A stretch of 64,000 nucleotides of DNA from Schmidtea polychroa (lineage: Eukaryota). Of this stretch, positions 1 through 56,780 are shown one piece after another; position 1 is the first letter of the stretch; each line of letters begins with the position of its first letter. The stretch covers positions 122,078,001 to 122,142,000 of the forward strand of contig CM097885.1 in the NCBI GenBank assembly GCA_044892525.1, read 5' to 3'. The notes beneath the pieces were generated by a model, which had not been told where the DNA came from, did not search any database, and saw only the letters and a program-made list of their open reading frames with translations. The translations under genes were made by a program, and so were the position numbers.

Positions 1-660
1 TAATTTTTTAGAACCATAATTTACTTTAATTTAATTTTTAGAACCTTAATTAACTTTAATTCAAATTTGGACCTTAATTTACTTTAATTGAAAATTTTAG
101 ACCATAATTTACTTAATTGAAATTTTAGACCTTAATTTGCTTATTTATCTTTAATTTACTTAAGTTTAAAAATATATACCATAATTTACTTAATTGAAAT
201 TTTAGACTTTATTTTAGAACTTAATTGAAAATTTTAGACTTTATTTTAGAACTCAATTGAAAATTTTAGACCTTATTTTCATGTAAAATTTTAGACCATA
301 ATTTACTTATTTGAAAATTTTAGACCTTAAATTGCTTAATTGAAAATTTTAGACCTTAATTTGCTTATTTATCTTTAATTTACTTTAATTTAAAATTTTA
401 GACCATAATATACTTAATTGAAAATTTTAGACCATAATTTACTTATTTGAAAATTTTAGACCTTAATTTACTTAATTGGAAATTTTAGACCTTAATTTGC
501 TTATTTATCTTTAATTTACTTCAGTTTAAAAATATATACCATAATTTACTTTAATTTAAAAATTTGGACCTTAATTTACTTAATTGAAAATTTTAGACCA
601 TAATTTACTTAATTGAAAATTTTAGACCTTAATTTACTTAATTGAAAATTTTAGACCATA
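1..660. repeat. AT-rich minisatellite, ~30-bp unit (TTAGACCWTAATTTACTTAATTGAAAATT-like)
   Basis: About 20 degenerate head-to-tail copies; a variant block recurs at ~126-190 and ~486-550. Runs off the window start. Confidence 0.9.
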
Positions 661-2461
661 ATTTTAATGTAAAATTGTCATTGAAAAAATTTTCATTTCT
701 CAGGCGATGTTTATAGTAGGTAGTTAGGATTATGGTATGAAGGGTCCTTTTAAGAAAGTAATATAAATGCCATTGAATAACAGCAAGTGTTTGAACATAA
801 CCAATTGTCAATTTTGCTTGAAAATTAGCTAAATTTTCAACAAGATAATGACATACCCTACAGATTCAGAATAAAAATGAAGTGATTGAGTAATAAAAAT
901 TAGAAATCATTAGTTTTCAGGTCTTATTCTATTCTATATTCAGAATAACTTTAGACATTTACTGAAATAAAAAATTATGAAACCAATCCGGTGTAATTCT
1001 AGGTGGAAGAAAAGATTTCTAAATAAATTTTCTTCGTTTTTTATCTTATTGAATATTTCTTAAATTGTAAGGGAACTCCAAATTTTCGGATTACTTAATC
1101 TGTTTATCCTTAATTTAAATTATTGAATAATTAAAAATTGCAAAACATGAATTTGCAAAATATGTATCAGGCCTATTCTCGAGTTATTAATAAAAATACC
1201 AATTAATTAATTAAAATTATGTTGATGAAATTAATAATTTTAATAAGAAAACGAAATCCGGTAGCTTAGCATGCATAATAGTGGCTTACCCACAAGTGGA
1301 AAAATAGTTAAAATTTATTTTGTTTATTCTAAATGAAGATTTAGGAAAATTGTATTGTAAATGTTTGTTAGAAGACAAAGTAAGCTTAATTTGCCGAACT
1401 CAATCGAAAACAAATGGTGTTAAAATTTGGAAAAGTGTTTGGCGTACTTGGTTTTGAAATTAGTTTTAATTTTATTCGTAAAGAATAAAATAGTTTCAGG
1501 TGGTCTACCTTGGGAACATCTCCTCTAAGTTTAAACTATTATTGTTGAACGATTAAATTTTTGTAATAACTGTGTTTGAAATAAAACTTATTGTGTTGGG
1601 TTTACTGTTTTAACCTAAAAGACACGTGGAGTCTGATTACAATGTTTTTCGCGTTTAATTTATGTAATAACTCAATAAATTATTAGAATATCAAAACATC
1701 GTAAAAAATTTACCGAAGTTTAACTCAACAAAACTGAAAAAATCTTTTTTAATAAATTTGACTTTTATCAACCAATATAATTATTAGAACTTAGCAAATT
1801 AATTAAAAATTAATTAATTAAATTTCCAAAGTAAAATCAATATATTTCGGTGGAAATGTAAAATATTGATCATTATAAAATCAAACATGTATCAAATAAT
1901 TTTAAATTGGTGAATGGCACCTAGTAGGCTATAATGCAAAAATACAAATTAATTAATTAAAGTGTTCACACCATCAATCAGCGCACTTTGAAAAACAAAA
2001 TTCGTATTTTGATAAATGAGGGAGTAATGGCGATTATAGAATAAAATAGAATTTATTTTATAATGAAAACTTGTAAAAGAGGCTTTTGCCGCGATGATTG
2101 ATGCAAATATAAAATATAATTTGGTTAAAATTTGACACGTTTGAGGCGAAAAAATTAAGTAATATGTATTGACCTACCATATAGTCAACGAGAAGAGGAA
2201 AAGTTTGAGACATCATCTACCAAACGAATCGGAGCAAAGGAAGATTTAATTTATTGTAAAAATTGAAAATCAGCTGCCTAGAATCTTACATTTTTGCGAT
2301 CAAAAATTTGCATAAAATTGCATTGTTTTAAAGTTTTAATGTTCTTTTTTGCTCTTTTTTTAAATATAGAGCACGTTATTTTTATAAACAGCATTGAATA
2401 TTATTTATCGTAAAAAAGTTTTCAATCTACAGATAATATTAATTTACAGAATTTACAGGTT

Positions 2462-8555: not shown

Positions 8556-10978
8556 GTACCGATGAGAATCAAATAAGCTTCGAACATATTTATCATTAAA
8601 AATTTCATTGAATATCACTTAAATAGGTTTTATTTAGTTAGTCATCCCAAAAACCGAAAATCATTTGATTTATTGACTGAAATAATATTGTAAAGATTTT
8701 TCGATCATTATGGTCAGACTCCACAGTATAGTTCCTATACTGGTAATTCAAACTAAATTCCAAACCATAATTTTGAAAGTTTACTTCGTGCATCCGTAAA
8801 CTTTGAGCATTTTTAACTTGTAATGGTGTAAAATATTTTAAAAGTTATTTTAACAGTCCATTATTTATCATTTAAAATTATCTTAATAAATCATTAAAAT
8901 ATTTAATTCTCAGCTGAAAACACCTCACAATAACAATATCAGAGTTTGACTAATTATATAGTTCTTTTCATAAGGAAATAATTTTCTTTCGCCTCAAGGA
9001 GATAATGATGTTATAACTTAAATTTAAATTTTCCAAATAATTAAAAAAAGAATATTCAAAATTCAAAATCAAGAAATCATCTAATTAAAATTTGAAAAAC
9101 TGATCAGATGTAAATGAGATGATTGGAAAGATCATGACGAGAACGGATTCATCAGAATATGTTCAGAAATGATCGAAATGCAAGAAAACGTACAAAAATA
9201 GAAAATCGTTAATTAATTAAATAATTAAGGAAAACCTGTGTTAAGTAAACAAAAAGAAAAGTAAACAAAGTGAATTCTGGAAAACACTTCTGGAAAATCC
9301 TCAAAAACGGGGAAAAAATTACCATGAGGGAGAGGCAAGGTGTGACAACTAATTATTTCTTTCGAAGGATAAAAGATAAAAAAGGCCGTGAGACAAAGCT
9401 TGTCAAAAGACGATCTAGTTGAAATACCTTTAATCAATGCGATTATTTTAACTATATAAAGGAACTCAAGTTAAGAAGCAATCGGCATTTTGCCTCAGAT
9501 AGGGACTAACAATTTGACAGTAGCATTTAAGGTAAACTTAAAGTCAGAAAATTGAATTAATGGAAAGGAAAACAAAAGACTCAAGTTAAGTCAAAGGATT
9601 AAAGAAAAGAGGTGAATATTGTTGCAGAATGTGCAGAACCAAAGTGGTAACAGTGGAACATTGAATAGCCAGAATAGGCATTTTTATTGTGATATTCGCA
9701 GTTTTGTAAATTGTAGATTATACGAATTCGAATATAAATATACATTGAGTATTGCTTGTCTAAATGTTTTTTTAACAGACACTTGAAGTCAGAAACACCA
9801 ACTTTAATATTTAATTATATGAAAACTCAACAAATGTGATTTACAAAATATTCAAAAAATAATAAAAATCCAACTAAGTTACTTCAACGTAGATTTTGAT
9901 CAACACAATATATGCTCAATTAACGACGGTGCAACAGTAAATCAGAAATCTTACAGAGAAAATTCATCTAAGCAGATTTTGCGTCTAAACTCTAAATTAA
10001 ATTTAGCTGTAACAAAATTCTTCAACAAAAAACACGTTGCTCAATTCTGATGATACTTACAGTGACAAAGACTGTTTAAATATTCGGATTATATATGCAA
10101 TATATTATTTGGAAATAGCGTTTTAGATTTAATGAATATTAATGGAAATTTGCTGGTGACCACGCCGAAATCGCAGCTCTGACGATATTCAATTTATCCA
10201 GTGATAAAGAAGTATTTTTGGAGGAAAAGAAGAAAATGCAATGGATTTGGGATTCACCTTATTTCAAAAGATTAGATCAGATATTGGTAAAATACAATCT
10301 GTTATTAATAGTAAATGATGATAAGCAGAAGATAATAATTCCGCAGAAGATAGCGTCGTACAGCATATGCACAAAGAACTCTGTCATTTAAGAGTTAAGA
10401 AAACAACAAATTTTATGAACGATTATTTCTATTGGATACACATGGTAACCAATATACTAGATATTATAAAAAAATGTGATTTATTCATGAGTAGGAAAGT
10501 TTTGACACTTAAAACAGACACTGAGTATTTAATTCCTAGGGTAATAATGAATTCGATGAAACAAATCGTAATCGATTATTGCTCATATGAAAGAAATCAG
10601 AAACCGTAACCGTTATAATAATTGATTAGTTCAGCAAGATGGTTAGTTCAACATCTACTCAGAACCAAGATGAAAAGACTGTATATGGGGTACTTTTACA
10701 CAATTGGATATACAAATACGATAAGCCAGCTTACATTTTTTTCGGATAGAGGTAAGGTTTTCGAGGGAAGTCGAATCCAAGGGTTAGTTGATAATTTTAA
10801 CATCAAAAGGATATTTACTAAACCGTATGATCATGGGTCTAATCGTTTAACAGAACGGGTAATACGAACGATTGGTGATATAATCCTAACAATTTTGTGT
10901 GATGGTCGAACTAAACTCAACATCACAGAATTCTACGGGATTTTCGCCAATGGAAATAATATTTTGAAGAAAGGTTAT

Positions 10979-13900
10979 TGTAAGACTAAACGTTTTTCAA
11001 ATTTTATTTTTACCACATTTTCATAATATTAAAACAACATTAATTGTTTAATATTACACTATTCCTACATCCCCGCCAGATTCATCTGAATCTTTAACAA
11101 CTCTTTTTCTAATATCACCCACGTGTCGCGGCATATCATATCCATTACATCTGACTAAAAATTTTGTATTTGATAATGGTTTAATGATATGCCCATCTTT
11201 CCATCTTTCTGTGCATTTTTGATTCAAATTCGGTTTTATCCATACTGGGTCACCAGCAGAATATTTTGCTTCGATTATTATCTCTTTTTTATTGTAGCTT
11301 GGCAGATTCAGCTTTGGATTATATCTAAATATGGCTCTAGATGGACAAATATTATTGTTGTTTGGCATATTGTTTACACAGCTTCTGCGATTGTTCTTGA
11401 GGACCTAGCTGCTAGCAATTTGATTGTCTGATGGCTGCGTTCAATGATCTCGTTTCCCGCTGGACGGTTCACTGTTCTACAAACCAACTCAACATTCCAT
11501 TTATATGCTAATTCTTGAAATGTTCTAGATCTAAAAGATAAGTAATTATCTAATAATATTTCACTTGGAACTCCTCTTTCATATAGCACTTCATATAAAG
11601 AATTACATATCTCTTCTACATTTTCATTCTTAATTTTCTTCCAGATTGCATATCTCGATGGTCCACAGTCAATAATTGACAAATATTTATCTTTAGCAAA
11701 TATAGTTACATCAATTGCTAAACGGCACCAATTTTCATCACAGCTTAGTTCACCCTTTTCCCACGTTACTGGCGCTGGGTCAATTGATAGTCATTGATTA
11801 CAACTTGCAATTATTTCTGAGATCTCATTATCCACATTTAGTAGCCCCACTTCCGATGCTATGAATCGCATACGATTTTTCCCTACATGGCAGTTCTTAT
11901 GAATCTCTAATAACACATCTTTCGAGCTTTTTTGATTGCCTAGAGCTGCGACTTCTTTTTTAATAATCATCCAGTTGACTGGTACTCTCGTTAATACACC
12001 AGCCTTGTTATTTTCTGTAGATACAAACGCAATGTCCATTTTAAGTTCATACTCAATCGCTAGATCTTTTAAAAGCTCCAGCTTTCGTCGTATTAACAAC
12101 TCTGAATTTGCTTTTGTATGTATTTTTCTGTCGCTTGATAATATGCTGTTAACACAACACACAACTGATTTACTATGGGATTTAATTTTGATGTACTTTA
12201 GATTCCATTTAATACATAAATTAATACCCTTCACAATCGCTTCTAATTCCACCAAATTAATGTGTCTTGAATCACCAAGTTTTCGCAACCAACACGCATC
12301 TTCAACCACTGATCCTTCCATTTCTAATACAATTCCAATGGCGATCGAACTTGTATCGCACCAAATTATGCCTTTCTGATTGGTGGGAACACTCCAAATA
12401 CCTGACGATGATCTCTTTCATTCACTTTTTCTAAAAACCATTTTACTTTGTCAACAATATGGTTTTCTATTGAATCATCCGAATTTCCACTGGATAGCCT
12501 CTTGATGTATGAGCAAGCTGGCCACAACCACACCGACACAGGATAAATTCTAACTAACTGGCCACATAACGAATACAGTTCTCTTCTGAAAGCCCTTCAT
12601 TTAATTCATTTATCCGAATATAGTTCGATCTTTTCCAATGTAGTTCGTTATTCTTTCGAAATACATCAATACCTAATACTCTTACACTGAGAGTATCCTT
12701 GACCTTTTCTTCTTCTTTACATATCAAACCAAATTTACGCATTTCTGCACTTACTTTACTTGCTTTAACTTTAGATTCATCTACGAATATATCGTCTATG
12801 TATGAACTTGTGCTATTCTTGATTGATTCATTGTTCAATACTTTATTCACAATCTCTGTCATTATATTCAATCCAAATCCCATTCTCGTAAGCGCATATC
12901 TCTTCCCATTAACCATACAAGATTGATATCGCCACATGCTTTTATCCACATGTATTTGCATATATGCATCAGATAAATCTAACATTGCAAATTCTTTACT
13001 TAAACATCTCCATGATCGTAATTTTTCAGAACAAATATCTGCATTCCCACTATATACATTAATATATTTATTGATACTCCTTAAGTCAAATACTGGACGC
13101 ACTTTCGCTTTATTTAACTGAATTATACCATAAATAAGTACTGATCCGATCGGTTTGCCCATTGTTTTCTCGTCGTAATAAATTAGATAGCTGTTAGATA
13201 TCCAAGAATTTAGGATACGCATCGTATCCTGATCCTTACTACAATTATCATAAAAGTTTTACTTTCTATTAGGTAGAAATTTCGGCGGCTCTGACTTCCA
13301 ATCCCATTTGACAATCCATTTCTCGTTTTCAAATCTCGCAGAGAAATTTTCCTTCAATATTTATGACATACTACTACTAGAGCACGCTACATGACAAGGT
13401 GCTTCTTCACAACCGAATATGGCTTCTTTATTCAAATGAACTCCACCAAACCTATTAATGGCATTCACTCCTAAAATTACATCATAATTGGATACTAGTT
13501 TCGGGTATATTAAACAATCAATATTAAATAACTTATCTCCAACCCATATATCAACTTTACTTCACCTTGCATATATGATCGAACCATCAAGCATCGCTAC
13601 CGCAGTCATAGATTTTCGTGGATTTCCTTTTACTATAGTGGTAGTGCTGCCCGAATCAACTAAATATGCCTTTACATCACCATTTACTTTTAGGAGTCTC
13701 ACATATTCACAATTCTTGGGGCCACGCCCGATTCCACATTGTGTGTAGCCCCTTGATCTTTTCCCAACTTGCAAAACCTTAAAATATGTCCCATAATACC
13801 GCATTTTGCACATCTGATGTTGCGTCTTTTTGGACAGTATCTTACCACATGATTAGCACTATTGCATTTTCGATTGGCTTGTCTTCCACTATCTGATCTT

Positions 13901-14503
13901 GGTACTACTACCGTTTCATTTTCATAAATTTGATAACTTGCGATTTTCTTTGCTTGAGCGACTAACTCATTCATTGTTGACGCTGTTGACATCTTTAGTT
14001 GATTTCACAAATCACTTGGTAAGCTATTTACAAAAAATCGGGTTAGTAGATCACCTGAACATTCCAGCAGTCCCCTTAATTCATTTATATGGACATCCAA
14101 GTTATCACCCATTAATAACTTTTTCTGTAAAAGTTTCGTAAAAGCTTCTTGCTCGCTCATACTGAAGGTTTTCAATAATTCCTTCTTCAGCATACCAAAA
14201 TCCATTGTCGTGTTGCTTTTCTGTAACTGTTTGAAAATTGCATAAGATTGCCCTTCAAGTAAAAATGGCATTACATTCATGACATTTTTCACATTCTTGG
14301 CTTCCAAAATAATTTCGAGTTTGTCGAACCATTCTTCCACATCTCTATTTTTGCCATCGAATTTTCCAACATTTTCAATTATGATCTTGTTGATTTCCAT
14401 TGCCCGGATAGCTTGTAAGACTAAACGTTTTCAAATTCTATTTTTACCACATTTTCATAATATTAAAACAACATTAACTGTTTAATATTACATTATTCCT
14501 ACA
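10979..14503 (-). mobile_element. Complete compact Gypsy-order LTR retrotransposon (3.5 kb, 90-91 bp LTRs), ORFs decayed
   Basis: LTRs 10979-11069 and 14414-14503 (TG..CA; 3 substitutions + 1 indel); TSD gttat/gttac; PPT GGCGGGGA; gag 14400->13700, protease YLVDSGSTT, RT (PVFDLRSIN, LDLSDAY, SYIDDI), RNase H (VEDACWLR..HINLVELEA), integrase (LLDNY..GNEIIERSH). Confidence 0.92.
14402..14413 (-). promoter_or_regulatory. Putative primer-binding site complementary to tRNA-Lys(UUU) nt 1-12
   Basis: Plus strand reads GCCCGGATAGCT, abutting the 5' LTR with no gap; gag ATG begins 1 nt after it on the element strand. Confidence 0.75.
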
Positions 14504-15494
14504 GTTACTATACATTGAAAGAATTCATTCATAGATCTTAATCGAGAACAAGTATTATTGACAGCACAGAATAATATTATGGTAGCGGCAGATAAAATGA
14601 GATCAAGAGATGCAGATAAGAAAAGTCATCAGCATTTTGAGGTGGATCAAAGAGTACTAGTAAAAGTGGATCTACATAAGAGATCAAAACATGGTAATTT
14701 GTCCGAAGGTCCTGTAAAGATTCTTGGTTTTCCAACCGTACACAAAGTTGAACTGGAATAACCAGATGGGAAAAGATGCAGAAGAATTGAATGGTTGAAA
14801 GAGTATCACAGTTCTTAAAGAAGGAGAGAGTGATGATATTTAGACTGCTATTTTGTTTAAATATTCAGATTATATATTAAATATATTATTTGGAAATAGC
14901 GTGTAAGATTTAATGAATATTAATGGAAATGTTACTATGGCTCAATTGATGATGGGATAATGATTCAAGAAATAAGTAGGGAAAATTAAATTCATAAACA
15001 TTCAAATTTGTTCGTCCAATTGAAAGCTTTGAGAACGGTTATGAAATTTTATATCAGATCGCCTTCGAAAAATAATTTTTATAAGAAAAAATAAAATCCC
15101 ATCATGGTAAAAGAAAAATTAGAATTATTTAAAAAAATCAAATTATAAATTGCCGTATAATCTAATGATAAGCAGTTGAGACTAAAAATTGAGTTATGGT
15201 TTTCAAATGTTTAACTTTATTTTTTATTAGTGTTTTTGATTTAATATAGTGAAATATTTTCGATAAATTAAAAACATTTTCTTTTTACTTTATTTATTAA
15301 ATAATTTTTTATTTATGGAAATTTACCGGTTTCAGGAAAACGCAGGTAATACAGGAATTGTCAGTCGTCAATTTTGTGTAAAAATGTGTTTCAAGGTTAA
15401 ATTCTGGGGTGTTCCAAATGCTTTAAATGGCTTACTGCAATTCTTTCATTGTTGGTTAATGCAGTGCGGTAAAATTACTTGCTTCATCCTAGAC

Positions 15495-17209: not shown

Positions 17210-17390
17210 NNNNNNNNNNNNNNNNNNNNNNNNNNNNNNNNNNNNNNNNNNNNNNNNNNNNNNNNNNNNNNNNNNNNNNNNNNNNNNNNNNNNNNNNNNN
17301 NNNNNNNNNNNNNNNNNNNNNNNNNNNNNNNNNNNNNNNNNNNNNNNNNNNNNNNNNNNNNNNNNNNNNNNNNNNNNNNNNNNNNNNNNT
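17210..17390. other. Assembly gap (N run)
   Basis: 181 N bases. Confidence 1.
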
Positions 17391-21320: not shown

Positions 21321-21753
21321 TATGTATGTCTAATTTTCTTTGTATATTTTTATGTTGTTATTTTGTATGGTTTTATGTGTATTTTGTTTCTGTTTTTTTT
21401 ATATATTCAACCTGGATAAAACAAAATAAATATACAATTTACTCCATATTTACAAAGGAATCAATAAAAAACTGTACAATCAGCATTGTTTGTGTGTTTA
21501 TTTGTGTGCTTTATTTAAGGCAATTGCTGTATCGTTTTTTTTGTATAGGGGTGTGATTATTGTGTCTTTGTCAAATAGTTTGATTGAGTTTTTGTAGTTG
21601 AATGTGATGTTTTTGTGAATTGGTTGTGTTTTCGTTTGTGTTTGTATTTTGTTTTCTGGTGGGTTGTTTTGCAGGTTTTCGTTCAGGTGATAAGGTTTTA
21701 TTCGTCATGTTTATTTTTATTTTGTTGTTGTTTTTGATTATTGTGGCGACGTT

Positions 21754-21759
<6 letters not shown>

Positions 21760-21790
<31 letters not shown>

Positions 21791-22549
21791 AATTTTATTT
21801 TAAGTAAATCAATCTGGCACAAGGCCGAAGGGGAGAACGGTTCTCACCCTTAAATAAACTGAGATTTTTACGTTTATTCTCTTTGGATGCTGGAGTTAGG
21901 AACTCTGGCATCAAACATGGTTTTTTGGCTTGGTTTAGTATCGGTTAGGGGAGGCTTTCAGTCCAATCAGCTTATGCTTCCTGTCTAATAAGATTAAAAT
22001 ATCGGAGTAGGAAGACTCCATTTGTGATTTTTATAACGTTAATAGCTGATGTACTTATAATATAATAGAGATTGAAAGGATGTTGTAAAGTACCAAGGGT
22101 TTTAATATATTACAGATATGAGCACCTAAAAAAAAAGTATTATCCTATGAGCGGGGCCCCTACAAGGGCCCCTACATTTACACATAAGCCATATTAATCT
22201 ATTTATATTTATTTAAGTTTTAATAATGATTATTAGAAGGGGATAGAGTTATTAGTTGAGGCAAATAGCAGCGCATTAGTAATTAAATATTAAAAGTAAA
22301 AATATTAATAGTAAAATTATTAAAAGTAAAACCCCTAAATAGTTAATATTAATATAATAGTAAAATATTTGAGCTATATAAATACGCCTACACCTATATA
22401 CATATATATACATATATTAGTCATTGTTATAGGTATTTTCAATCCCTGGAGGAGACATATGAAAATCTAAGCAACTACGTATTTATCGTATTACGTTTAT
22501 AATAACCATAGTGTACAAATAAATATGGGTATGCATTGATATTATATAC

Positions 22550-22640
<91 letters not shown>

Positions 22641-23397
22641 CCTTAAGGGTGTGTTCTCTAAAGATATGATAGCTGCTTACTACCGCAGCTGTGCAAGCGT
22701 TTCTTGCCAGGCTTTTTATTTCAGTTTTGGAGAGACCTATTTTACTGAGAACTTGGTCGTTTTTGTTGTACCAAGAGCCTAGAGTACCTATTATCAAAGT
22801 AGACAATGTAGTTTTTACTTTATGAGTTTTTTCTATTTCGATTGCCAAATTGGCATATTTTCCGTAATTATCTGCATCCGCTTTTTTAAAATTTTCCCTT
22901 TGCTCGTAAGGTACTTTGATATCTACAATGTGGGTAATTTTATTTCTCGATGATCTGATGAGTAGGTCAGGTATTAAGGTAGTTTCGATTCCCTGTGGCG
23001 TGCGTTCGATGTCCATTTTGAATCCATAGTTAAGAAGAGATTGACATACCGCTTCTAGTACACGTGTATGCTTATTTCTTCTTGCATTTATTTTTGCAGG
23101 GCAGTGATTGAATACATGCGCCTGTGTCTCTGGGTGGGAATTGCATTGCCTACATAGAGTATTTTTTTTTGCCTTTAATCTATGTGGTGCATAGTTTAGT
23201 TTAAGGAGATTGTTCCTTGCTCTTAGAAGGAATAGGTATTGAACATCGGTTAGAGTGTCAGTTTTAACCAGGTAGTCAGCCACGCTACTATTGCATATGG
23301 ATTTAGCAATATGCCCTTGGCATTTGAGATTGATCCATTTTTCTGCATGGATTAAGCCTATTATTGAGTGGAGTTCTGATGATGTGTTGTTGAGATT
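21760..23397 (-). mobile_element. 5'-truncated RLE-type non-LTR retrotransposon (R2/NeSL/R4 group) inserted in the Gypsy integrase tail
   Basis: Open frame 23397->22636 with CCHC knuckle CRQC..ETQAHVFNHC and PD-(D/E)xK nuclease (IPDLLI..VDIKVPY); 8-bp TSD tttttgtt (21752-59, 23398-405) defined against Gypsy copy 2. Confidence 0.9.
22555..22636. repeat. (TA)n microsatellite
   Basis: About 40 units, starting at the stop codon of the RLE ORF. Confidence 0.98.
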
Positions 23398-26164
23398 TTT
23401 TTGTTGATTTCTAGGAGTTTGAATGAACCTTCTTATTTGGATTCAAAACCCTTTGTGAATGGTTTTTTTTATTAGAATGAAATCTGTTGTTAGTACTGTT
23501 TTTCCATCCACTTCAGAGTCCGGTCTCCTTTTGATTTCTGTTCGGTGGTTTCGCTATTTTTGTTTGTTATTTGTTTGATGTTTTCAGTGATTTTAGTTTT
23601 ATTTGATTTAAGTGATGGCGAATTTGTTGCTTTTTTAAAAACCGTGTATGCTGGACTTCTGTTATCTAATGAGTTTGGGCTATTTCTCAGTCCGATTAGT
23701 ATTGTGGGTAGTTGATTTAACCAGTTTTCATCATTGGCTTTTGTTCTGATGCTTTCTTTTAATGTTCTGTGAAACCGTTCAATTTTCCCGTTTGATTGTG
23801 GGTTGTAAGCTGTTGTTTGGTTCCTTTTGATGTTGTATTTGTTGCAGAGTATTTTGAACATTTCTGATTCGAACTGTCTGCCTTGGTCAGTTATGATTGT
23901 TTTCGGTTGGCCATAACGAGCTATCCAATTTAGTTCGATCCTTTCACAGATATTTTTTGCGCTGATTTCTTTTATTGGGATTACTTCGAACCAGTTGGAT
24001 TTCCTGTCTATAATTGTTAGCAGGTATTTGTAGTTGTCGTTTGGTGGTAGTGGTCCTACCACGTCTGTGTGTATCGTTTCAAAAACGTCGCTGCTTGGGA
24101 AGTTTACTTTTTGTGTTTTGAGTTTTTTTGTTGTTTTATTTAGTTGGCAGTTGTGACAACTCTTGATATCGTTTTTGATATCATTCCGCATGTTAGGCCA
24201 TATATAGTTGTTATGTATTAACTCGAATGTTACTTTGTTTCCCGGGTGATTAATCTTGTATATCTTTTCGATACAGCTTTGGCGGAATTCCTACGGGAGT
24301 AATATTCGTTTGTTGCTTTCGTTGGAGACGTCGTGCCATACTCCGTTGTGTTCTGTGTTTAGTGGAGAGTTTGTTAATTGTTTCGTTTTGTTTGGATTTG
24401 ATTTGATCCAATTCGATTATCTCTTCGAATTACAGGGAGTTTATGTCACTTTCGTTTCTTGATTGAGCGTCTGCTGCTATGTTTGATTTTCCCGCTACGT
24501 AGTTTATTGTGCAGTTGAATTGTGAAATGAAGTTGATTTGTTTTCATTCGATTGCGTTAGTTTGCGGTTTGTGATCTGTGAATATTTTGAAGTTTCGTCC
24601 TTCAATTAAATATTAGAAGTGTTTCGAATACTTTTTCGACGTCTTTTAGGTGTGTTTCTTTGTTTGTTATTAGGATGTCGTCCAGATAAGCTACTATGTT
24701 TTTGGAGTTTTTGAATGTTTGGTTCATAAATCGTTGGAAAGCGGCTGCGGCATTCCGTAAACAAAAGGCATTCTATTGTACTCGAACATACCTATCGATG
24801 TTGTTATTGCTGTCTTTTTTACGTCCTCTTTTTTAATTGGTATCTGGTGATATGCTTTTTGCAAATCTATTTTTGAAAAGAAGTATTTTGCACCATTTAT
24901 TCGGTTTATTATATCTTTTATTATAGGTAATGGATAGCTGTCTGGTTTTGTTATTTTGTTCAGTAGTCTGTAATCACCACAAGCTCTCCATTCGCCATTA
25001 GCCTTTTGTTTTAGCATCAGTGCTGAAGACCATTAAGAGTTTGAATGTCTGACTATGTTGTTTTCCAATAGTTCGTTAAAAATGTTTTTGTGATTTCTAT
25101 TTTTTCTGGATCTAGTGGTCTTACTTTTGCATGTACTGGATTTCCATTAGTAATGATGGCGTGTTCAGTTGAGTGGTTTGATATTCCGTCGAAAGTTACT
25201 GGAACGTGTTCAATTACTTTGATTGTTTTAATAATTGGTGTGTTTGTTTGTATCACGCCGATGTCTACTTTTGAAATGTTTGTCGTTTTAATCTTGCTGG
25301 TTTCCTTGTCTGATGTGATGTTTTCGATTAATTTTTTGTTTCTGCAATCCACTTTTAAGTTGTAGTGTGCTAAGAAATCAGCTCCTATTATTGATTGTTG
25401 TACCTCTGCGATTGTGAATGACCAGTTGTATTTTTGTGAATTTATTGTTAAGGTTGGTGTGTGTTGGTCGTATGTTTTATGCTGGAGCCATTTGCAGCTG
25501 TTAGTGATTTTTCTGTTGTTTATACGTTTTTGTAGATGTAGTGAGGTAGTAGTGATATTACAGAGCCTGTGTCAATTAGGAAATCAGTGTTATTTGTGTA
25601 CACCAAAAATGTATTGTTTTTGTTACTGAATGTGGGTGCTATCAACAAAGACTGTTTTAGTTTTCCTGTTCTATCTTATGAAATTCGCAGGGTTTTGTGC
25701 ATTTGTATGCTTTGTCTCAGAATTTGTTATGAAAGTAGCAGTGATTTTTGTTTATAAACTCGCTTCTTGGTTCTTTTTCTGGGCTATTGTTTCAATTTGG
25801 GGAGTTTGACCTGTTTCTGTAGTGATTGTTTGGGGATTTTCTGCGGCTGTAGTTCTGCCTGTTGTTTCCTTCAGATGATCGGTTATAGTTTTGTTTGTTA
25901 TGATTTTCTGATGGTTGGTTTGTGTTGAAATTGTTTCTGTTGAATAGATCTCTGTTTTCGTTTGGGTTGAAATTTTGCCTGTTGGTGAATTATGAGTTTA
26001 TGTCGCGTCTGTGTGCGTTCTCTGTTTGCATTTGACATTGGTTTTGTATGCGCACAAAGACGCGATCAGTGTAATTTTAAAGATTGATTATTATTTTAGT
26101 TTTTGGATTTCGCTGGAATTTGTGTGAATTTGATAGTTGTTTTAAAAATTGGTTTTCTGGAAGG

Positions 26165-28658: not shown

Positions 28659-28951
28659 TTAAAGAAAAATTTTCTTGTTTAATATGCCATAGAAATTTCA
28701 AAACTAAATTTGAATTAAAAAACATGCTAGAGAATGTGGTGAAGAAAGTGAACAAGAAGAAAACTGGGATGAATTTAATCACAATGATATATTTGGTTCT
28801 GGAGAAGTTGCAACATGCTCAATTTCATCATATATTTAAAAACATTTAAAAAAGATAAAAGATTCAATGGAGGAATCTATAAAAAAATTCAAAATTGCAA
28901 GGTTCAATAATTTAAAATACAAAATTATAGTTAAAACAAGATATTGGACGG
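28659..28951 (+). repeat. 293-bp direct duplication (second copy 31442-31734) flanking the piggyBac
   Basis: Both copies run from TTAA to GGACGG and appear identical except for 2 nt. Confidence 0.95.
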
Positions 28952-31441
28952 CCAGAGCGGTCATTTTGACCGTTAAGTAATTTAATTTTTAATTTGTGAG
29001 AAAACGAAAAGGAATTAAGGTCTCATATTTTGTGACAATTATTCATTTTTAGTGAACTTGTTGTGCATATCAAAGCTTCAATTATAGCATTTGTCACGAC
29101 TGAGATAATGAGGCCATCCCCATGGAAGGCCGAACCGGTCAATTTGACCGGTATCTTGAAACACACAAGAAAGTCACACATAATCATCTTACATACTAGA
29201 AAATATAAAACCAAATATAATTTACACACAACCGAAGCATTTAACAGTCATTTGGGAATGTTTTCCACAGTAAACTTTACTACATACATGGCATATAGCT
29301 CCGGATTTGTTATCACAATGAGGAGCAGAACAAGTTTTTCGCTTCTTTAATTTTGGTTGTTCAGAACAGAGTTCACCAGAGATGGGACTTGCTGTTCGAC
29401 GGCTTTTGAACTCCTCACAAAGAGATGTAGCTAATTCAAAAATAAAATCCCTTCTTTTTATAGTTGATCCCGTAGCATCTTTGAAAATAACATGAGCGTT
29501 GAGAGCTGCTTTATCAAGCAAATCATAGAAAGTAGCGACTGGCCATCTTGCTGTTGCGGCTTTACTGCTGTATAAACGCAACATGCTATCCATGGTATCT
29601 ACAGCTGTCTTATTTTTGTTATAAAAGTGTATCATTTCAGGCTTTCTCTTTTCGTCAGATCTCACACTAGCAGTAGAATGGAATGTTGACATGACAATGA
29701 CTTTCTTGTCCGATTTGCCTTGATAGGAAACAGTGACAGTGTTTTGACACGATAAATGAGTCGATTCAAAAAGAGGCTTTTTCTCCAAGTGAGCTGATGA
29801 TAAAAAGCGTGAATTTAATCTTACAGTACCAACCAATGTTGTTCGATTTACAAGGAGATGTTCAGCTAGTGAGAGACTTGTAAAGAAATTGTCAGTGCAG
29901 ACATTGTATCCTTTATTGAAAAATGGCTCCATTAGTTTCCTGACTACAAAATCACCCAGCCGTAATCCACAGCGTTCGTTTCTATCGTGAGCCCCTAACA
30001 ATGGCATTTGATTGATGACAAATTTGGTTTTGACATCAATGAGAATCCAGTATTTGATACCGAATTTATCAGGCTTATTTGGCATAAATTGGATGAAGCA
30101 ACACCTATTTTTTAGCGGCAAAAGTTGCTCGTCGACAGTAAGGAAGGGATTAGGAGTATAAACTTGAAGACAGTTTGAAACAAACAAGTCAAATATTTCA
30201 CGAAAATGGGCATATTTATCTTGTTCTACTCTTTGACGTCGAGAACATGGTTCATCAAAACGAAGAAAGCGCAGTATCTCACGGAAACGGTTCCGAGACA
30301 TGACTTCTCTGAAGTAAGGAGATCCAAATTGAGATGACCAGATTGAATTGATAGAATGTCGGCGAAAGCCTAACACACCACGGAGATACAGCAATCCAAG
30401 AAAAGCATCTAATTCTTGTAGACTGATACACCAGTCTGACGAAGCTTCTTTTCCTTTCATAATTGTGTATTTTTGAATTAACTTCAGCATTCCCTCAGAG
30501 ACTATCAAGCGCCAAGCGCTCAGGGGAGAGTCAATTTTGCGCTTTGCAAAAGCTTTCACACCAGGTGTTCCACTAAAAATATTGTGCGCAGGGAATCTGC
30601 CAACACTAATAGCGTGATTATTTTCTACTCGATTCCAAAGAGTGCCATCCCTGCTAGATAAAAGCTGATTTTCTAATGAAGAAATTGAGCTATTGACTGA
30701 CTCATTGTCACTTTCTAACGAACTTCCATTATCATCAGAGTTCCATTCATGTAACTCTTCGTCAGAATCATTTCTTTCGGGCTCATCATCACTTCCCATA
30801 GGCTGATCTTCATCTTCGGAGAGAGCAGCGTCAATATTCCATAGCTTCTGTAAAGCACGTTGAGCAGCAATTCTTTTAGTTGGCATATTTGATTCAAAAT
30901 AATGATAAAAACTCCGTCCATAAAATAAGAAACGTCAAATTTATTATTGGATTCTAATTGAAACACGGTTTTATAATGTTTGTTATCCCAAGAAGTTCAA
31001 AGATTTTCTATAACAATTATTAGATATTGTCTTATGACATTTCGTTAAGTTTTTCGTTTGATTCTTTTAATTTACCAAATTTCAAAACTTAGAACTCTTA
31101 ATGCTTGCTTAATTACACTTTTAATAAGCACTATCTTTGAATAAAAGCAAGAGAATATTTATAAACAAGAAATGAAGTATACATACATACCAATCTGAAT
31201 AAACGCGAAGACAATGTTTAAAATAGTGTAGCTTTGTGTCAGCTAAACAAATATTTAATAAATTAACTACTGTTAGAATAAAAATAGTTAAATTTTGAAA
31301 TCGTGTTAGTAGCACAAAGAAAGTATTGCTAAATGAGTTGCATCATAGAAATCTCAGCATGAAAATAAGGAGCATATGTGTACCGGTCAAATTGACCGGT
31401 TTGGCCTTCCAAGGTATAAAATATTTCCGGCCGTCCTAGTG
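28946..31441 (-). mobile_element. piggyBac element (CACTAG-type end), one end missing 5 bp
   Basis: Right end ..CCGGCCGTCCTAGTG|TTAA; left end begins GGACGGCC; subterminal inverted repeats at 29123-29153 and 31381-31411. Confidence 0.9.
29222..30886 (-). CDS. piggyBac transposase (PGBD4-like), intact 554 aa
   Basis: DDD triad TVDEQL / TDNFFTS / AVDTMD, KPDKFGIK motif and a C-terminal cysteine-rich domain; no stops. Confidence 0.95.
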   Translation of the reverse strand: MPTKRIAAQRALQKLWNIDAALSEDEDQPMGSDDEPERNDSDEELHEWNSDDNGSSLESDNESVNSSISSLENQLLSSRDGTLWNRVENNHAISVGRFPAHNIFSGTPGVKAFAKRKIDSPLSAWRLIVSEGMLKLIQKYTIMKGKEASSDWCISLQELDAFLGLLYLRGVLGFRRHSINSIWSSQFGSPYFREVMSRNRFREILRFLRFDEPCSRRQRVEQDKYAHFREIFDLFVSNCLQVYTPNPFLTVDEQLLPLKNRCCFIQFMPNKPDKFGIKYWILIDVKTKFVINQMPLLGAHDRNERCGLRLGDFVVRKLMEPFFNKGYNVCTDNFFTSLSLAEHLLVNRTTLVGTVRLNSRFLSSAHLEKKPLFESTHLSCQNTVTVSYQGKSDKKVIVMSTFHSTASVRSDEKRKPEMIHFYNKNKTAVDTMDSMLRLYSSKAATARWPVATFYDLLDKAALNAHVIFKDATGSTIKRRDFIFELATSLCEEFKSRRTASPISGELCSEQPKLKKRKTCSAPHCDNKSGAICHVCSKVYCGKHSQMTVKCFGCV

Positions 31442-32661
31442 TTAAAGAAAAATTTTCTTGTTTAATATGCCATAGAAATTTCAAAACTAAATTTGAATTA
31501 AAAAACATGCTAGAGAATGTGGTGAAGAAAGTGAACAAGAAGAAAACTGGGATGAATTTAATCACAATGATATATTTGGTTCTGGAGAAGTTGCAACATG
31601 CTCAATTTCATCATATATTTAAAAACATTTAAAAAAGATAAAAGATTCAATGGAGGAATCTATAAAAAAATTCAAAATTGCAAGGTTCAATATTATAAAA
31701 TACAAAATTATAGTTAAAACAAGATATTGGACGGAAATGAATCAAATCAAAACCTTCTTTATTCAGAAATTGAAACCAACTATAAATATTTATTTTCAAT
31801 GAGTGGATTCAAAAGAAGAATTAAAGATATTAAAGATAAAAGAGTTGGAAGAAAATCAAGAAGATCGTGAACAACAATTAGGAGAATCCAATTTAATTTT
31901 CCATTCTTTCCAAAATATTGAAATAAATTATTAAAAGGGAAGACCACCAACTCCTAGATCTTATATTCCAACACCATTTATTTCTAAATATATTATAAAT
32001 GTTAAAAATAGAGATAACAAATGTTTCCTATGGGCAATTTTATCAGCCCTACATCCACAAAAACATAATTCCGAGCGAGTATCTAAATATCGACAATATG
32101 AAAATGAAATAATATTTTGAGAAGATTTTATAAGTACTTATTGACGAATATTTATTTGCTATCTTTTTTAATAAAAATGAGATATATACGAATATGTTGT
32201 AGAATAATTATGTATGTATTATAAGAACTATTTTTTTCAAATTTCACCACTGATTTATTTTCCATTGTATTTAAATTCACTTGAAAAAGGCAGTGCCAGA
32301 AATTCCTAAATATCAAAAACATCGAAATATTTACTGATTCATAGCCTATAAGCTTCTTTTCATAAGTTTTTTTGCACAATTTCTCATACCAAAGTTTTTT
32401 TTCAGCTTACACGGTTTTTTAAAACTGTGGAAGACATCCTCAATTTTACTATGACTTCATGTCTTTTTTTACATGATTTTATTTTACACGGATTTCTTTG
32501 AAACGTATCTACCGTGTAAATTAATTAGTGCAATTAATTAGTTTTTTATAAATACTTTCGAAGACTAATAAAGTATACGTTAATATAATTGTTCTTAAAT
32601 CTAATTAAATAACTATTAATCCAAGTGTTTTAATATTCTTCAGTTTAATTAATTACAAATA

Positions 32662-36431: not shown

Positions 36432-36516
<85 letters not shown>

Positions 36517-39500
36517 CAAATAGAGACTGACAGGCTCTGTTGTGCTTTCTAGGGTTAAATAACGATAAAATAATTTACTTAATTCCAATTTCCAGTCAGT
36601 GAAAAAAAGGAAAATACGTAAGCTGTGTAGGAAAGAATGATAAATAAATATTATACAATTAATTACACCAGGGACCCATTTGTTAAAATAAAAATCTTTG
36701 GTGACCCGTTGGCAATTAAAATTTCCGCCTAGGGGGACGAAGTGAGCGACGGGCGATTAAGGGGTCTGGGCAGATATTCAGCCGCCAACGCTTTTTGGGA
36801 GTATTTAGGTGTAACAATTTTGACACCCATAGGGAAAGCAAAAAACGAACAGTCAGAAAAAATTGGCAATGTTGTCGCAAATATTTAATTATGGGTTTTA
36901 TGAACTGTATGGCAAAGTCGAATACGCCTAATAAGATGCCGGAAAACGTCGGAAGTTATGTATTAGTGTGCACATTCATATTGTGGTGTCAAAATAAGAT
37001 TTTGGTTTGGATTCTGAATCGCGAACATTTTAAAAAATCGCTGCGTGCACGCTGTAAGCTCTTATTCTTAATGTATGCGAATCGAATGACAGCGTACATA
37101 GCAGTACGGTCAACCTATCTTAGGTCCTGCGCACGGGAGTCAAATAAAATTTATTTTTATTTTCTGATTTGGTGACCCACTTGGAAGGATCCCGCGACCC
37201 ACAAGTTGGGAAACGCTTGATTAAACTAACCTATTGCATTATAATATATCAAAATCGTTGTTTTAAAATCAGTGGTTATTTTTTATGGTTGTGTTTGAAT
37301 GTTGGTATGTATGTGTGTTTGCAGGTATTCTGTATTAATAATTAGTAAACCAATAAACTCCCTTTTTATAGGTATTGTAATAAAGAGCTATATAATAGCG
37401 TGTTGAAGATTTATATTGGATAATAAAATTTGTTACAACTATGTCCCTTCTTACCAATTTGTATGTGTTTAATAAATACGATCAACCCTCGTTTTATCTT
37501 TGATGTAAAACACTGAAAATGGGTTCGAGGATTTCATACAAACTTGTGTTGCGAATCAATTTGCGCCTTCCAAAGAATTCGTTTGCCAGAATTCACTCGG
37601 AAAGAACCGAATCCAAATAGCATTAATTGAATATAGTTTGTAGTATTTCTGTTTTTGTTAAAATTGTTTTTCCCAACTATGTATAACTTAATTAATTTGG
37701 TAACCGTTTAATGTTTATTGATTTTTTTATTAATTTTAAAATATCGTGTTTTGAGCATCTACCAAAAATTGTTAAAGATAAAAAATGTTACGCCGCGTTG
37801 CATTTGATAAAAAATAATCAACAAATTAAGTTATAATAAACAAAGCAAACTCACGTGTGTGGCTACACCTGTCTATTTATTATAAATTTCAAGAAAACCT
37901 AAAATATGTTAATGAAACATACAAACACATAATTTTATATGGAGTTTTATATTCCCTTTTATACGGAGTGTACAATATATTGTACACAGTTTTGTGTGCT
38001 GAATATCTGTTGTAAGCTCAGTAAAATTAACACCTACTGATACGAAATGTACAATATAATGTACATTCTCTAAAGCCGTTATTTAAAAAAAAATTAAATT
38101 ATTTTTTTATTTTTTTGCATAATTTGAGTCCCCTTACTAGGTTTGATGGTCTAGATCAGAGGTGTGCAGCCAAAAGTGGTCCGAGGGCCACTTTTAGGAA
38201 AATTATTTTTATAGGGCCAGAAAAAATTTTTAAAAAAAAACCCCCGCTCAAATAAAAAAACCCAATTTCTTTTCAGCGGAATTTTTCTTAGGGTTTACCT
38301 TTTAATCTAAAAAAACAGGACACTATACGCTTAATTACTGCAGCTAGTTAGCATAGTGTACAATAATATCCGCTTTAAACTATTTAAAAAAATGAACAGA
38401 TTAATTATTTTATTCTTTCTGTGACTTTGAACTCTCCACAAGAGAATTAATGTCCGGTGAAATCCCGGATATTGCTAATCGCAAGGAACTTTCAAGATGA
38501 TGATCAGTTATCCTGGATCTCTGAACTGATTTAACGAATTTCATTCTGGAGAATAGCTGCTCACACTTGTAAGTGCTACCAATCAAAGCCAGTCGCTTTT
38601 GAACAAATCTTGATAGATTTGGAAATTCGCTTGCTGGAAAAAGTTTCATGGTTTTTGCTTTCATCCTCTGCTCTATTCTCCCCTGTTAATCTATCAGTTC
38701 CAGTTGGATTTGATGTGGAGCTGTTGAAACATCAACATCGAATGGAGAAGAAAAAATTTTAAATCCAATATTATGAATTCGAAAATCATTAAATCGGATC
38801 ATAAATTCTTCATGTAAAATTTCCAATTCATTGGCAAATTCCTGACAACATAATTCACTTTCAAAATGCTTTAAAAGTGTTGGAAAGTGATAAACTCAAT
38901 TTATTCGTATGTTTTTTGATTTCCACGGGCCAGAAAAATTCGCCTCACGGGCCACCATTTGCACGCCCCTGGTCTAGATAATTAATTTACCCACAGAATT
39001 AATTCCCGAATGAAACGGTTAATAAAATAAACAGGGAATGAAATTTAGCACCTAATAAAAGATTTTTTTGAAATTTGATTTGTTATTAAATTATATTCAA
39101 AAAATTCAGTTTTTTTTTAAGTAAAAACAATTTTTAAAGCTCGAGTGAATAATCAATAAAAGTTTATTTTCGATTATTTATTGTAAAAATTGTTATATTT
39201 TTTCGGAAGAAAAATTGTTAATGAGGAAAAGTACAAATGTAAAATACTATTAACTTGATAAAAATATTTTTTTCAATAAATCACATAAAAGATCAATGGG
39301 ACTATATTATCTCTAGATCCTAAGATAACACCCAAAATTCCACATTTCTATTTTAATAATCACTCACAATTAGCATAATTCTTTCACTATTATTTCGATA
39401 CTTCATTCTTACTACAGGCATCGTAACACACTATTTTGCTCAATTCCTATTTCATTATAATTTTACTGTCTTTATAAAATTATTGAAACTTTCATATTAT

Positions 39501-56500: not shown

Positions 56501-56780
56501 TATTTTCTAATATTTGTTTGTTTTTGCAATCCACTAGGAGGTTGTATTTTGTTAGGAAATCTGCTCCTATTATTTCTTGTTGAACGTCAGCTATAGTGAA
56601 TGTCCAGTTGTAATTTTTTGTTTTATATTCAGATTTAGTGTCTGTTGTCCGAATGTTTTGATGCTTGTTCCGTTGGCTGCTGTTAACGGTTTATCTGCAG
56701 TTTTTGTATTTTTATACATGTAGTGTGGCAGTAATGAGATCACCGAACCGGTGTCTATTAGAAATTCTATGTTGCTGTAT
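53591..56780 (-). mobile_element. Gypsy (Mag-like) internal region, copy 2 (protease-RT-RH-INT), gag missing
   Basis: Close paralog of 21326-25800; AYLDDILI, FDRELLAI..FTDHKPL, QSNGKIERFHR; frameshifted. Confidence 0.93.

What the first reader, a model, noticed from the sequence alone, without database searches (positions are those of the whole stretch)
14402..14413. Primer-binding site complementary to the 5' END (nt 1-12) of tRNA-Lys(UUU): candidate new priming mode
Seen: directly inside the 5' LTR the element strand reads ..TTACA|AGCTATCCGGGC|A|ATG, with no TGG-starting PBS and no complement of this 12-mer in the LTR, so Tf1-like self-priming from the LTR is not supported. Established: metazoan tRNA-Lys(UUU) begins GCCCGGAUAGCUCAG (recalled from the human sequence; the CUU isoacceptor has C at position 7). 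Standard PBSs pair with the tRNA 3' CCA end, copia uses a tRNA cut in the anticodon arm, and Tf1 uses an 11-nt primer cut from its own RNA. Inference: the primer is a 12-nt 5' tRNA fragment ending at U12, either pre-existing or cut after annealing by the element's RNase H. A GC-rich 12/12 match starting at tRNA position 1 and ending at the LTR edge is unlikely by chance in AT-rich DNA. I know no published example but could not check the literature.
Basis: partly seen in the sequence, partly recalled or inferred. Interest (0 to 1): 0.85.

Follow-up and report, generated by a model that had tools for sequence, protein, structure and literature searches.

The report
Retrotransposon primer site matching tRNA 5' end
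A dead, compact LTR retrotransposon in this window carries, exactly where its reverse-transcription primer must bind, 12 bases complementary to the first 12 bases of tRNA-Lys(UUU). About 60 distant relatives from nematodes, crustaceans and environmental samples have the same arrangement, matching Lys(UUU), Lys(CUU), Phe(GAA) or tRNA-like variants, which points to a priming mode I could not find described.

Summary
On the minus strand a 3,525-bp LTR element (10979-14503) has 90/91-bp LTRs, a 5-bp target duplication and a purine tract. AGCTATCCGGGC (14413..14402) touches the 5' LTR's last base (…ACA) and lies one base before the gag ATG. There is no TGG-type site and no complement of the 12-mer anywhere in the window.

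Papers print this string as the antisense of nt 1-12 of human and zebrafish tRNA-Lys(UUU).

The decisive evidence is comparative. The RT has 986 relatives. I read about 90 related loci from Trichuris, Trichinella, a barnacle and metagenomes. In 57-62 of them the motif …CA|AGCTA-NNNN-GGC sits just upstream of gag, against 0 on the opposite strand. In eight elements with both LTRs it starts at the first base after the LTR. Variants equal the 5' 12 nt of Lys(UUU), Lys(CUU) and Phe(GAA). None of 62 elements carries an exact Tf1-like self-primer.

Best reading: minus-strand synthesis is primed by the first 12 nt of a tRNA, cut after nt 12. The site and its complementarity are shown; the cut and the nuclease are inferred. 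The host is unidentified, so its own tRNA could not be checked. The window copy is dead. I found no published precedent, but the searchable library is incomplete.

The parts
10979..14503 (-). Whole LTR retrotransposon (3,525 bp), a dead copy nested in another element
   Evidence: LTR pair, termini, purine tract and target duplication read, domains
14414..14503 (-). 5' LTR (90 bp; TGTAGG...CTTACA on the element strand)
   Evidence: 95.7% identical to 10979-11069; sequence
14402..14413 (-). Minus-strand primer-binding site AGCTATCCGGGC, the complement of nt 1-12 of tRNA-Lys(UUU)
   Evidence: the same site is in relatives
13699..14400 (-). gag (CCHC zinc knuckle), broken by one in-frame stop
   Evidence: ORFs, Pfam zf-CCHC, break count
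11054..13813 (-). pol (protease, RT, DUF7047, RNase H, integrase), broken by 2-3 frameshifts and about 4 in-frame stops
   Evidence: its stop codon lies inside the 3' LTR
11070..11077 (-). Polypurine-like tract GGCGGGGA abutting the 3' LTR
   Evidence: similar tracts lie before the LTR in L001, L002, L005 and L087
10979..11069 (-). 3' LTR (91 bp)
10974..10978 (.). Target-site duplication, copy GTTAT
   Evidence: relative L003 also has a 5-bp duplication
14504..14508 (.). Target-site duplication, copy GTTAC (one mismatch)

Best explanation
The 12-mer is the minus-strand primer-binding site of a compact, retrovirus-like LTR retrotransposon lineage (gag, then protease-RT-DUF7047-RNase H-integrase; about 4-4.5 kb). 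It pairs with the first 12 nucleotides of a host tRNA: Lys(UUU) for the window copy, and Lys(CUU), Phe(GAA) and other tRNA-like 5' ends in relatives. DNA synthesis must run from the site into U5, so the priming 3'-OH has to be tRNA nucleotide 12. The tRNA must therefore be cut between nt 12 and 13, in the D stem.

The most likely route, by analogy with Tf1, is that the tRNA 5' end anneals to the site and the element's RNase H cuts at the end of the 12-bp RNA duplex. In Tf1 the first 11 nt of its own RNA pair with the site and RNase H cuts between nt 11 and 12. A pre-made fragment is the alternative. Plus-strand strong-stop synthesis would then run off the primer's natural 5' end (tRNA nt 1), giving a defined 12-nt overlap for the second jump.

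Shown: the position, orientation, exact 12-nt extent, family-wide conservation, matches to named tRNA 5' ends, and absence of a self-primer. Inferred: the use as primer, the cut after nt 12, and the nuclease. The window copy itself is inactive.
For: Anatomy in the window.

Family size: the RT ORF has 986 relatives, named only 'hypothetical' in Trichuris, Trichinella and crustaceans.

Motif counts: the strict motif NCA|AGCTA-NNNN-G(G/C/T)C occurs in 57 loci on the pol strand and 0 times on the opposite strand, in about 350 kb. The looser motif gives 68 against 5.

Boundaries: in eight elements where the LTR end is fixed by the second LTR, the 12-mer starts at the first base after the LTR. These are the window, L003 (T. 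suis), L009, L012, L038, L044, L089 (barnacle) and L090 (T. spiralis). Conservation falls from 1.0 at site position 12 to 0.56 at position 13 and to 0.29-0.59 at positions 14-30. The next ATG lies 0-43 nt downstream, median 6.

Variant sites equal to paper-printed tRNA 5' ends: Lys(UUU); Lys(CUU); Phe(GAA).

Site classes are partly clade-specific, with repeated switches on an RT tree.

No exact tRNA-sense 12-mer occurs on the element's own RNA in 62 elements, nor in the 450 nt upstream in 57.

Predicted 12-bp duplexes are -18.7 to -25.5 kcal/mol.

The Tf1 analogy is taken from PMC7175516.
Against: No tRNA gene was found in the window or in any fetched locus, and the host of the window was not identified. 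No element is therefore paired with its own host's tRNA.

About two thirds of the site variants matched no named tRNA in the paper library. Examples are the tRNA-sense forms GCCGCGATAGCT, GCCTAGATAGCT and GCCGTGATAGCT.

A cut after nt 12 is not a known tRNA fragment end, as far as I recall. There is no experimental or small-RNA evidence here. The closest relative, L087, has one mismatch in the site.
Confidence: 0.7

Rival explanations
1. Tf1/sushi-type self-priming: the 5' end of the element's own transcript folds back on the site and is cut to give the primer.
For: The site lacks TGG and is 11-12 nt long, as in Tf1 (PMC7175516). One relative (L068) has a <=1-mismatch copy of the tRNA-sense 12-mer 327 nt upstream of its site.
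Against: The complement occurs nowhere in the window at <=1 mismatch, and nothing inside the element at <=3. Exact copies: 0 of 57 elements in the 450 nt upstream and 0 of 62 over the whole element RNA. Self-primers would not be expected to equal tRNA-Lys and tRNA-Phe 5' ends.
Confidence: 0.03
2. The 12-mer is a conserved cis element with another role, for example a target for 5' tRNA fragments, a translation or packaging signal next to the gag AUG, or tRNA capture without priming. Priming would happen elsewhere or otherwise.
For: The site sits 0-43 nt from the gag start codon, so tRNA annealing could affect translation. No direct evidence of priming exists.
Against: In the window, L003, L012, L061 and L068 the gap between LTR and ATG holds the 12-mer and at most one further base, so there is no room for another site. 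The 12-mer abuts U5 in the orientation that puts a 3' end at the LTR edge, which is what a primer site needs. Conservation stops exactly at the position pairing with tRNA nt 1.
Confidence: 0.12
3. The primer is a cellular RNA other than mature tRNA that shares the 5' sequence, such as a pre-tRNA, a tRNA-derived SINE transcript or a tRNA-like small RNA. Or, in the window's host, the 12-mer belongs to a tRNA other than Lys(UUU).
For: The same 12 nt start E. coli tRNA-Phe, so the 12-mer does not fix tRNA identity. The host is unknown.
Against: Three site classes equal the 5' ends of abundant cytoplasmic tRNAs of metazoans, and named hosts of the family are metazoans. Complementarity begins exactly at mature tRNA nt 1, which does not fit a leader-bearing precursor.
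Confidence: 0.12
4. Chance resemblance of a GC-rich 12-mer to a tRNA 5' end.
For: None beyond the single window copy taken alone.
Against: 0 of 100 shuffles gave a match. The site recurs in about 60 relatives, against 0 on the opposite strand.
Confidence: 0.01

Closest known systems
Tf1/sushi-group self-priming (Schizosaccharomyces pombe Tf1)
   Same: A short (11-12 nt) site directly after the LTR, without TGG. The primer is the 5'-terminal 11-12 nt of an RNA, which in Tf1 is released by the element's RNase H between nt 11 and 12 (PMC7175516). The template end defines the plus-strand stop.
   Different: In Tf1 the primer is the element's own transcript and its complement lies in the LTR. Here no such complement exists, and the site equals host tRNA 5' ends. 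The cut is proven in Tf1 and only inferred here.
copia / Ty5 / Candida Tca-type priming by internal tRNA regions
   Same: The site does not pair with the tRNA 3' CCA end, so the tRNA must be cut to provide the 3'-OH. Sites complementary to internal regions of tRNA-iMet and tRNA-Arg(UCU) are described in PMC4139406.
   Different: Those sites pair with internal stretches, mostly of initiator tRNA-Met, in Ty1/copia-type elements. Here pairing is with nt 1-12, the extreme 5' end, of Lys/Phe-type tRNAs, and the gene order is PR-RT-RH-IN.
Conventional retroviral / Ty3 sites, e.g. retroviruses that use the 3' end of tRNA-Lys3
   Same: The same host tRNA species (Lys-UUU, Lys-CUU) is exploited. The site follows U5, and switching between Lys isoacceptors occurs (ETn example in PMC7472051).
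   Different: The opposite end of the tRNA is used, 12 nt instead of about 18, there is no TGG, and the tRNA has to be cleaved.
Dictyostelid Skipper elements (polypyrimidine tract in place of the primer site)
   Same: A Ty3/gypsy-like lineage that lacks the TGG signature and any self-primer, for which unconventional priming has been proposed (PMC5006619).
   Different: Skipper has a degenerate polypyrimidine stretch with no identified partner. Here the partner is identifiable.
Odin retrotransposons / lokiretroviruses
   Same: Retrovirus-like pol with a cellular-type RNase H after an extra domain and no env (PMC9040795). In this family Pfam finds DUF7047 followed by RNase_H/RVT_3, and the RT profile is nearest to foamy-virus PR-RT among solved structures.
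   Different: Odin was reported only from sea anemones after a screen of 1,710 protostome genomes. This family is in nematodes and crustaceans. The paper does not mention primer sites. Relationship not tested.

Membership tests
LTR retrotransposon (Ty3/gypsy-retrovirus gene order) | Two direct LTRs with TG...CA termini, a target-site duplication, and a purine tract before the 3' LTR | tested here: met
   90/91-bp LTRs 95.7% identical, TGT...ACA termini, 5-bp duplication with one mismatch, GGCGGGGA tract
LTR retrotransposon (Ty3/gypsy-retrovirus gene order) | gag with zinc knuckle, then protease, RT, RNase H and integrase in that order | tested here: met
   window pieces; intact relatives
Conventional 3'-tRNA primed elements | Site starts with TGG (complement of CCA-3') and complements the tRNA 3' end | tested here: not met
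   the site starts AGCTA, and no TGG site fits in the 13-nt gap between LTR and ATG
copia/Ty5-type internal tRNA-fragment priming | Site complements an internal stretch (anticodon arm region) of initiator tRNA-Met | tested here: not met
   The complement runs from nt 1 to nt 12 of Lys(UUU)-type tRNA. Initiator tRNA itself was not compared.
Tf1/sushi self-priming | The first ~11 nt of the transcript (in the LTR) are complementary to the site | tested here: not met
Tf1/sushi self-priming | RNase H cut of the RNA duplex 11-12 nt from the RNA 5' end | not testable with these tools
   Inferred by analogy only
Proposed 5'-tRNA-end primed lineage | 12-nt site abutting the LTR, complementary to nt 1-12 of a tRNA | tested here: met
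   Window. Relatives.
Proposed 5'-tRNA-end primed lineage | The host genome encodes a tRNA with exactly that 5' end | not testable with these tools
   No tRNA genes in the window or loci; host unidentified
Odin / lokiretrovirus-like | Dual RNase H (tether plus acquired RNase H) and RT phylogeny next to retroviruses | not tested
   Only Pfam hits DUF7047 + RNase_H/RVT_3 and a PDB profile search

The most novel reading that the evidence does not exclude
A deep, phylum-spanning lineage of compact retrovirus-like LTR elements (nematodes, crustaceans, annelid-associated and aquatic samples) starts reverse transcription from the 5'-terminal 12 nucleotides of host tRNAs, cut after nt 12. This would be a fourth priming mode beside the 3' tRNA end, internal tRNA fragments and self-priming. 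It works like Tf1 self-priming in trans, and it has switched repeatedly among Lys, Phe and other tRNAs that share U8-A9-G10-C11-U12.
Probability: 0.45. Interest if true: 0.85.

Novelty: new variant of a known kind. Interest (0 to 1): 0.78.

Why it matters
Priming of minus-strand DNA is a defining step for retroviruses and LTR elements, and only three modes are textbook knowledge. A fourth mode that uses the other end of the tRNA would matter in four ways.
- It would pose a concrete enzymological question: what cuts a tRNA in the D stem after nt 12?
- It would link Tf1-type 5'-end-measured cleavage to tRNA priming.
- Standard annotation tools look for TGG sites, so they would miss or misjudge these elements.
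- It predicts that 5' tRNA fragments could interfere with this lineage, as 3' fragments do with mammalian endogenous retroviruses.
Young copies with identical LTRs in Trichuris suis and a barnacle mean that public sequence and small-RNA data from those hosts could test it.

Tried and rejected
- Host identification failed. An exact look-up of the intact piggyBac ORF found nothing. The homology search gave a 99% unnamed match only.
- ARAGORN found no tRNA gene in the window or in 60+ loci. Rfam found nothing in the window.
- I did not scan metagenomes for tRNA genes carrying the 12-mer. Bacterial tRNAs share it and would swamp the output, so the single metagenome scan went to related elements instead.
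- Paper-library searches for the other site variants, as DNA, as RNA and as antisense, gave no named tRNA and no retrotransposon paper. Two supplement searches were empty.
- Phrase searches for a 5'-tRNA primer site gave nothing relevant. Two older papers on priming were not held.
- Odin retrotransposons were considered as the lineage. The paper does not discuss primer sites and reports a different host range.
- The neighbouring + strand element's integrase is only generically related to this family.
- One locus (Macrobrachium) returned no DNA.

Full report
WHAT IS THERE. The finding lies on the minus strand. The + strand at 14402-14413 reads GCCCGGATAGCT, so the element strand reads AGCTATCCGGGC. 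A self-comparison of the window gives one short direct repeat pair, about 10978-11069 and 14413-14503, 95.7% identical. Reading the sequence refines the LTRs to 10979-11069 and 14414-14503. On the element strand each runs TGTAGG...CTTACA. A purine tract GGCGGGGA abuts the 3' LTR (+ 11070-11077). The flanks carry a 5-bp duplication, GTTAT / GTTAC. The element is therefore 3,525 bp with LTRs of only 90/91 bp. It is inserted in the integrase of another, + strand, deleted LTR element. Between the 5' LTR and the gag ATG (14400) lie only 13 nt: the 12-mer and one A. ORF pieces give zf-CCHC, RVT_1, DUF7047, RVT_3 (RNase H) and rve, in the order gag-PR-RT-RH-IN. Compared with intact relatives, gag has one in-frame stop and pol has 2-3 frameshifts and about four stops. 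The copy is dead.

CHANCE. The 12-mer is unique in the window at <=1 mismatch on both strands, and none of 100 shuffles gave a match. At <=3 mismatches the count is at the random level and none of the matches lies in the element. The window has no tRNA gene and no Rfam match.

tRNA IDENTITY FROM PRINTED SEQUENCES.
- The human tRNA-Lys3(UUU) gene printed in PMC8715211 begins with the window's + strand 12-mer.
- The zebrafish 5'tRF-Lys(TTT) Northern probe in PMC4688932 ends with the element-strand 12-mer.
- Human tRNA-Lys(CUU) differs at position 7 (PMC12140204). The Triops Lys(CUU) 5'-half probe ends with AGCTAGCCGGGC (PMC4501094).
- Human Phe(GAA) starts GCCGAAATAGCT (PMC10505166). The Drosophila Phe(GAA) 5' probe ends AGCTATTTCGGC (PMC7038984).
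- E. coli tRNA-Phe shares the window 12-mer. The amino-acid assignment therefore depends on the host being a metazoan.

THE FAMILY. The RT ORF finds 986 proteins at E<=0.001. Intact relatives are about 900-1,200 aa pol or gag-pol proteins with DUF7047 and cellular-type RNase H hits. Source names place them in Trichuris suis and T. muris, Trichinella species, and the crustaceans Macrobrachium, Petrolisthes, Amphibalanus, Portunus and Pollicipes. All are 'hypothetical'. Against solved structures the integrase is nearest MMTV, Ty3 and PFV, and the RT is nearest foamy-virus PR-RT. I fetched 10 loci by exact protein look-up and 80 from metagenomes.

THE SITE IN RELATIVES.
- The looser motif CA|AGCTA+7 occurs 68 times on the pol strand and 5 times on the other strand in 348.5 kb.
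- The strict form NCA|AGCTA-NNNN-G(G/C/T)C is present in 57 loci and gives 0 hits on the opposite strand. A few more loci differ only in the LTR's last bases. Most loci without it are contigs that lack the 5' end.
- In eight elements the LTR end is fixed independently by the second LTR, and the 12-mer starts at the very next base. These are the window; L003, T. suis, LTRs 100% identical, 5-bp duplication; L009, L012, L038 and L044; L089, barnacle, LTRs 100% identical; and L090, T. spiralis, LTRs 99%.
- Across 59 distinct contexts the last three LTR bases are 88-98% conserved. Outside the anchored site, conservation falls to 0.56 at position 13 and 0.29-0.59 at positions 14-30. The next ATG follows after 0-43 nt, median 6. 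Site positions 1, 3-5, 10 and 12 were fixed by the search pattern; the sharp edges were not.
- Main site classes, element strand, counted as distinct contexts: AGCTATCGCGGC 12; AGCTATCTAGGC 11; AGCTATTTCGGC 11; AGCTATCACGGC 7; AGCTAGCCGGGC 3; AGCTACCTCGGC 3; AGCTATCCCGGC 2; AGCTATCCGGGC 2 (window and L084); AGCTATCGAGGC 1 (T. suis).
- L089 (barnacle, AGCTATTTCGGC) and L090 (T. spiralis, AGCTATCGCGGC) were read after that count.
- The closest RT relative (L087, 58% identity) has ACCTATCCGGGC followed directly by ATG, and a 133-bp LTR.
- Read as tRNA, all main classes keep G1-C2-C3 and U8-A9-G10-C11-U12 and vary in acceptor-stem positions 4-7.
- Three classes equal named tRNA 5' ends: Lys-UUU, Lys-CUU and Phe-GAA. 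The others found no named match in the paper library.
- On a rough RT tree the classes are partly clade-specific, but the same class recurs in separate clades. That fits repeated primer switching by one or two substitutions.

SELF-PRIMING TEST. The tRNA-sense 12-mer is absent (0 exact) from the 450 nt upstream of the site in 57 elements. One element reaches <=3 mismatches, against 6.6 expected from shuffled 12-mers. It is also absent from the whole element RNA in 62 elements, with one <=1-mismatch case, L068.

MECHANISM. Geometry is fixed by the sequence. The primer's 3' end must pair with the site base next to U5, and that is tRNA nt 12. tRNA nt 13 (C in the printed Lys3 and Phe sequences) would face the LTR's terminal A, so pairing stops at 12. 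A whole tRNA therefore cannot prime and a cut after nt 12 is needed. By analogy with Tf1 (first 11 nt paired, RNase H cut between 11 and 12; PMC7175516), I propose annealing of the tRNA 5' end followed by a cut at the duplex end by the element's RNase H. The predicted duplexes are stable, -18.7 to -25.5 kcal/mol. The cut and the nuclease are inference. From general knowledge, not tested here: a tRNA with A at position 9 avoids the pairing-blocking methyl-G9 common in eukaryotic tRNAs, which may explain the invariant A9. The closeness of the site to the gag AUG suggests competition between tRNA annealing and translation; this is speculation.

COMPARISON AND NOVELTY. The site fails the defining tests for 3'-end sites (no TGG), for copia/Ty5-type internal sites (pairing starts at nt 1) and for Tf1 self-priming (no complement in the LTR). 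It works most like Tf1, but in trans with a tRNA. All ten literature searches found no description of such a site. The antisense strings occur in papers only as Northern probes for tRNA 5' ends. The library lacks most subscription journals and older retrotransposon papers. PMC7175516 mentions 'novel mechanisms of priming' proposed for Cryptococcus Tcn2-5, which I could not read. I therefore rate this a new variant of a known kind, with a real chance that it has been noted before.

LIMITS. The host of the window is unknown. No element was paired with its own host's tRNA set. Most site classes lack a named tRNA. There are no expression or intermediate data.

Noticed in passing
window 10073-10978 and 14504-14930 (+ strand): The studied element is nested in the integrase of another, internally deleted LTR element. 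That element also has very short LTR copies (10073-10149 / 14854-14930, 93.5% identical) and a TGG-starting primer-site-like string about 4 nt after its 5' LTR copy. Its integrase piece is only generically related to the studied family.
   Followed up: partly
window 29222-30886 (-), flanks 28659-28951 and 31442-31734: An intact 554-aa piggyBac-type transposase ORF (PF13843) is 99% identical to an unnamed Logan/ENA protein. It lies between two 293-bp direct repeats that are 99.3% identical.
   Followed up: partly
window 1-715: Tandem array with a 29-bp period.
   Followed up: no
window 21366-25591 and 53675-56773: Duplicated retroelement-like segment, 79-87% identical, with an integrase ORF at 23490-24191 (-).
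   Followed up: no
window 22550-22640 and 36433-36517: An ~80-bp sequence matches in both orientations at two places, so it is a palindromic repeat, 95-100% identical.
   Followed up: no
window 17210-17389: Run of 180 N, left untouched.
   Followed up: no
L003 2647-7182 (Trichuris suis KL363267.1): A relative with 100% identical 344-bp LTRs and a single 1,174-aa gag-pol product lies within the span of a ThiF-family gene model on the other strand. It is probably a recent insertion in an intron.
   Followed up: no
L068 about 1286 versus site at 1613: This is the only relative with a <=1-mismatch copy of the tRNA-sense 12-mer upstream of its site. It is either chance or a local exception.
   Followed up: no
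L001, L010, L025, L054: The site and gag start recur about 4.0 kb apart in the same contig. These are either tandem elements sharing an LTR or assemblies collapsed over the LTR.
   Followed up: no
L090 7438-12675 (Trichinella spiralis): A BEL/Pao-type element (Pfam DUF1759, Pao_retrotransp, DUF5641) lies next to the studied family's copy.
   Followed up: no
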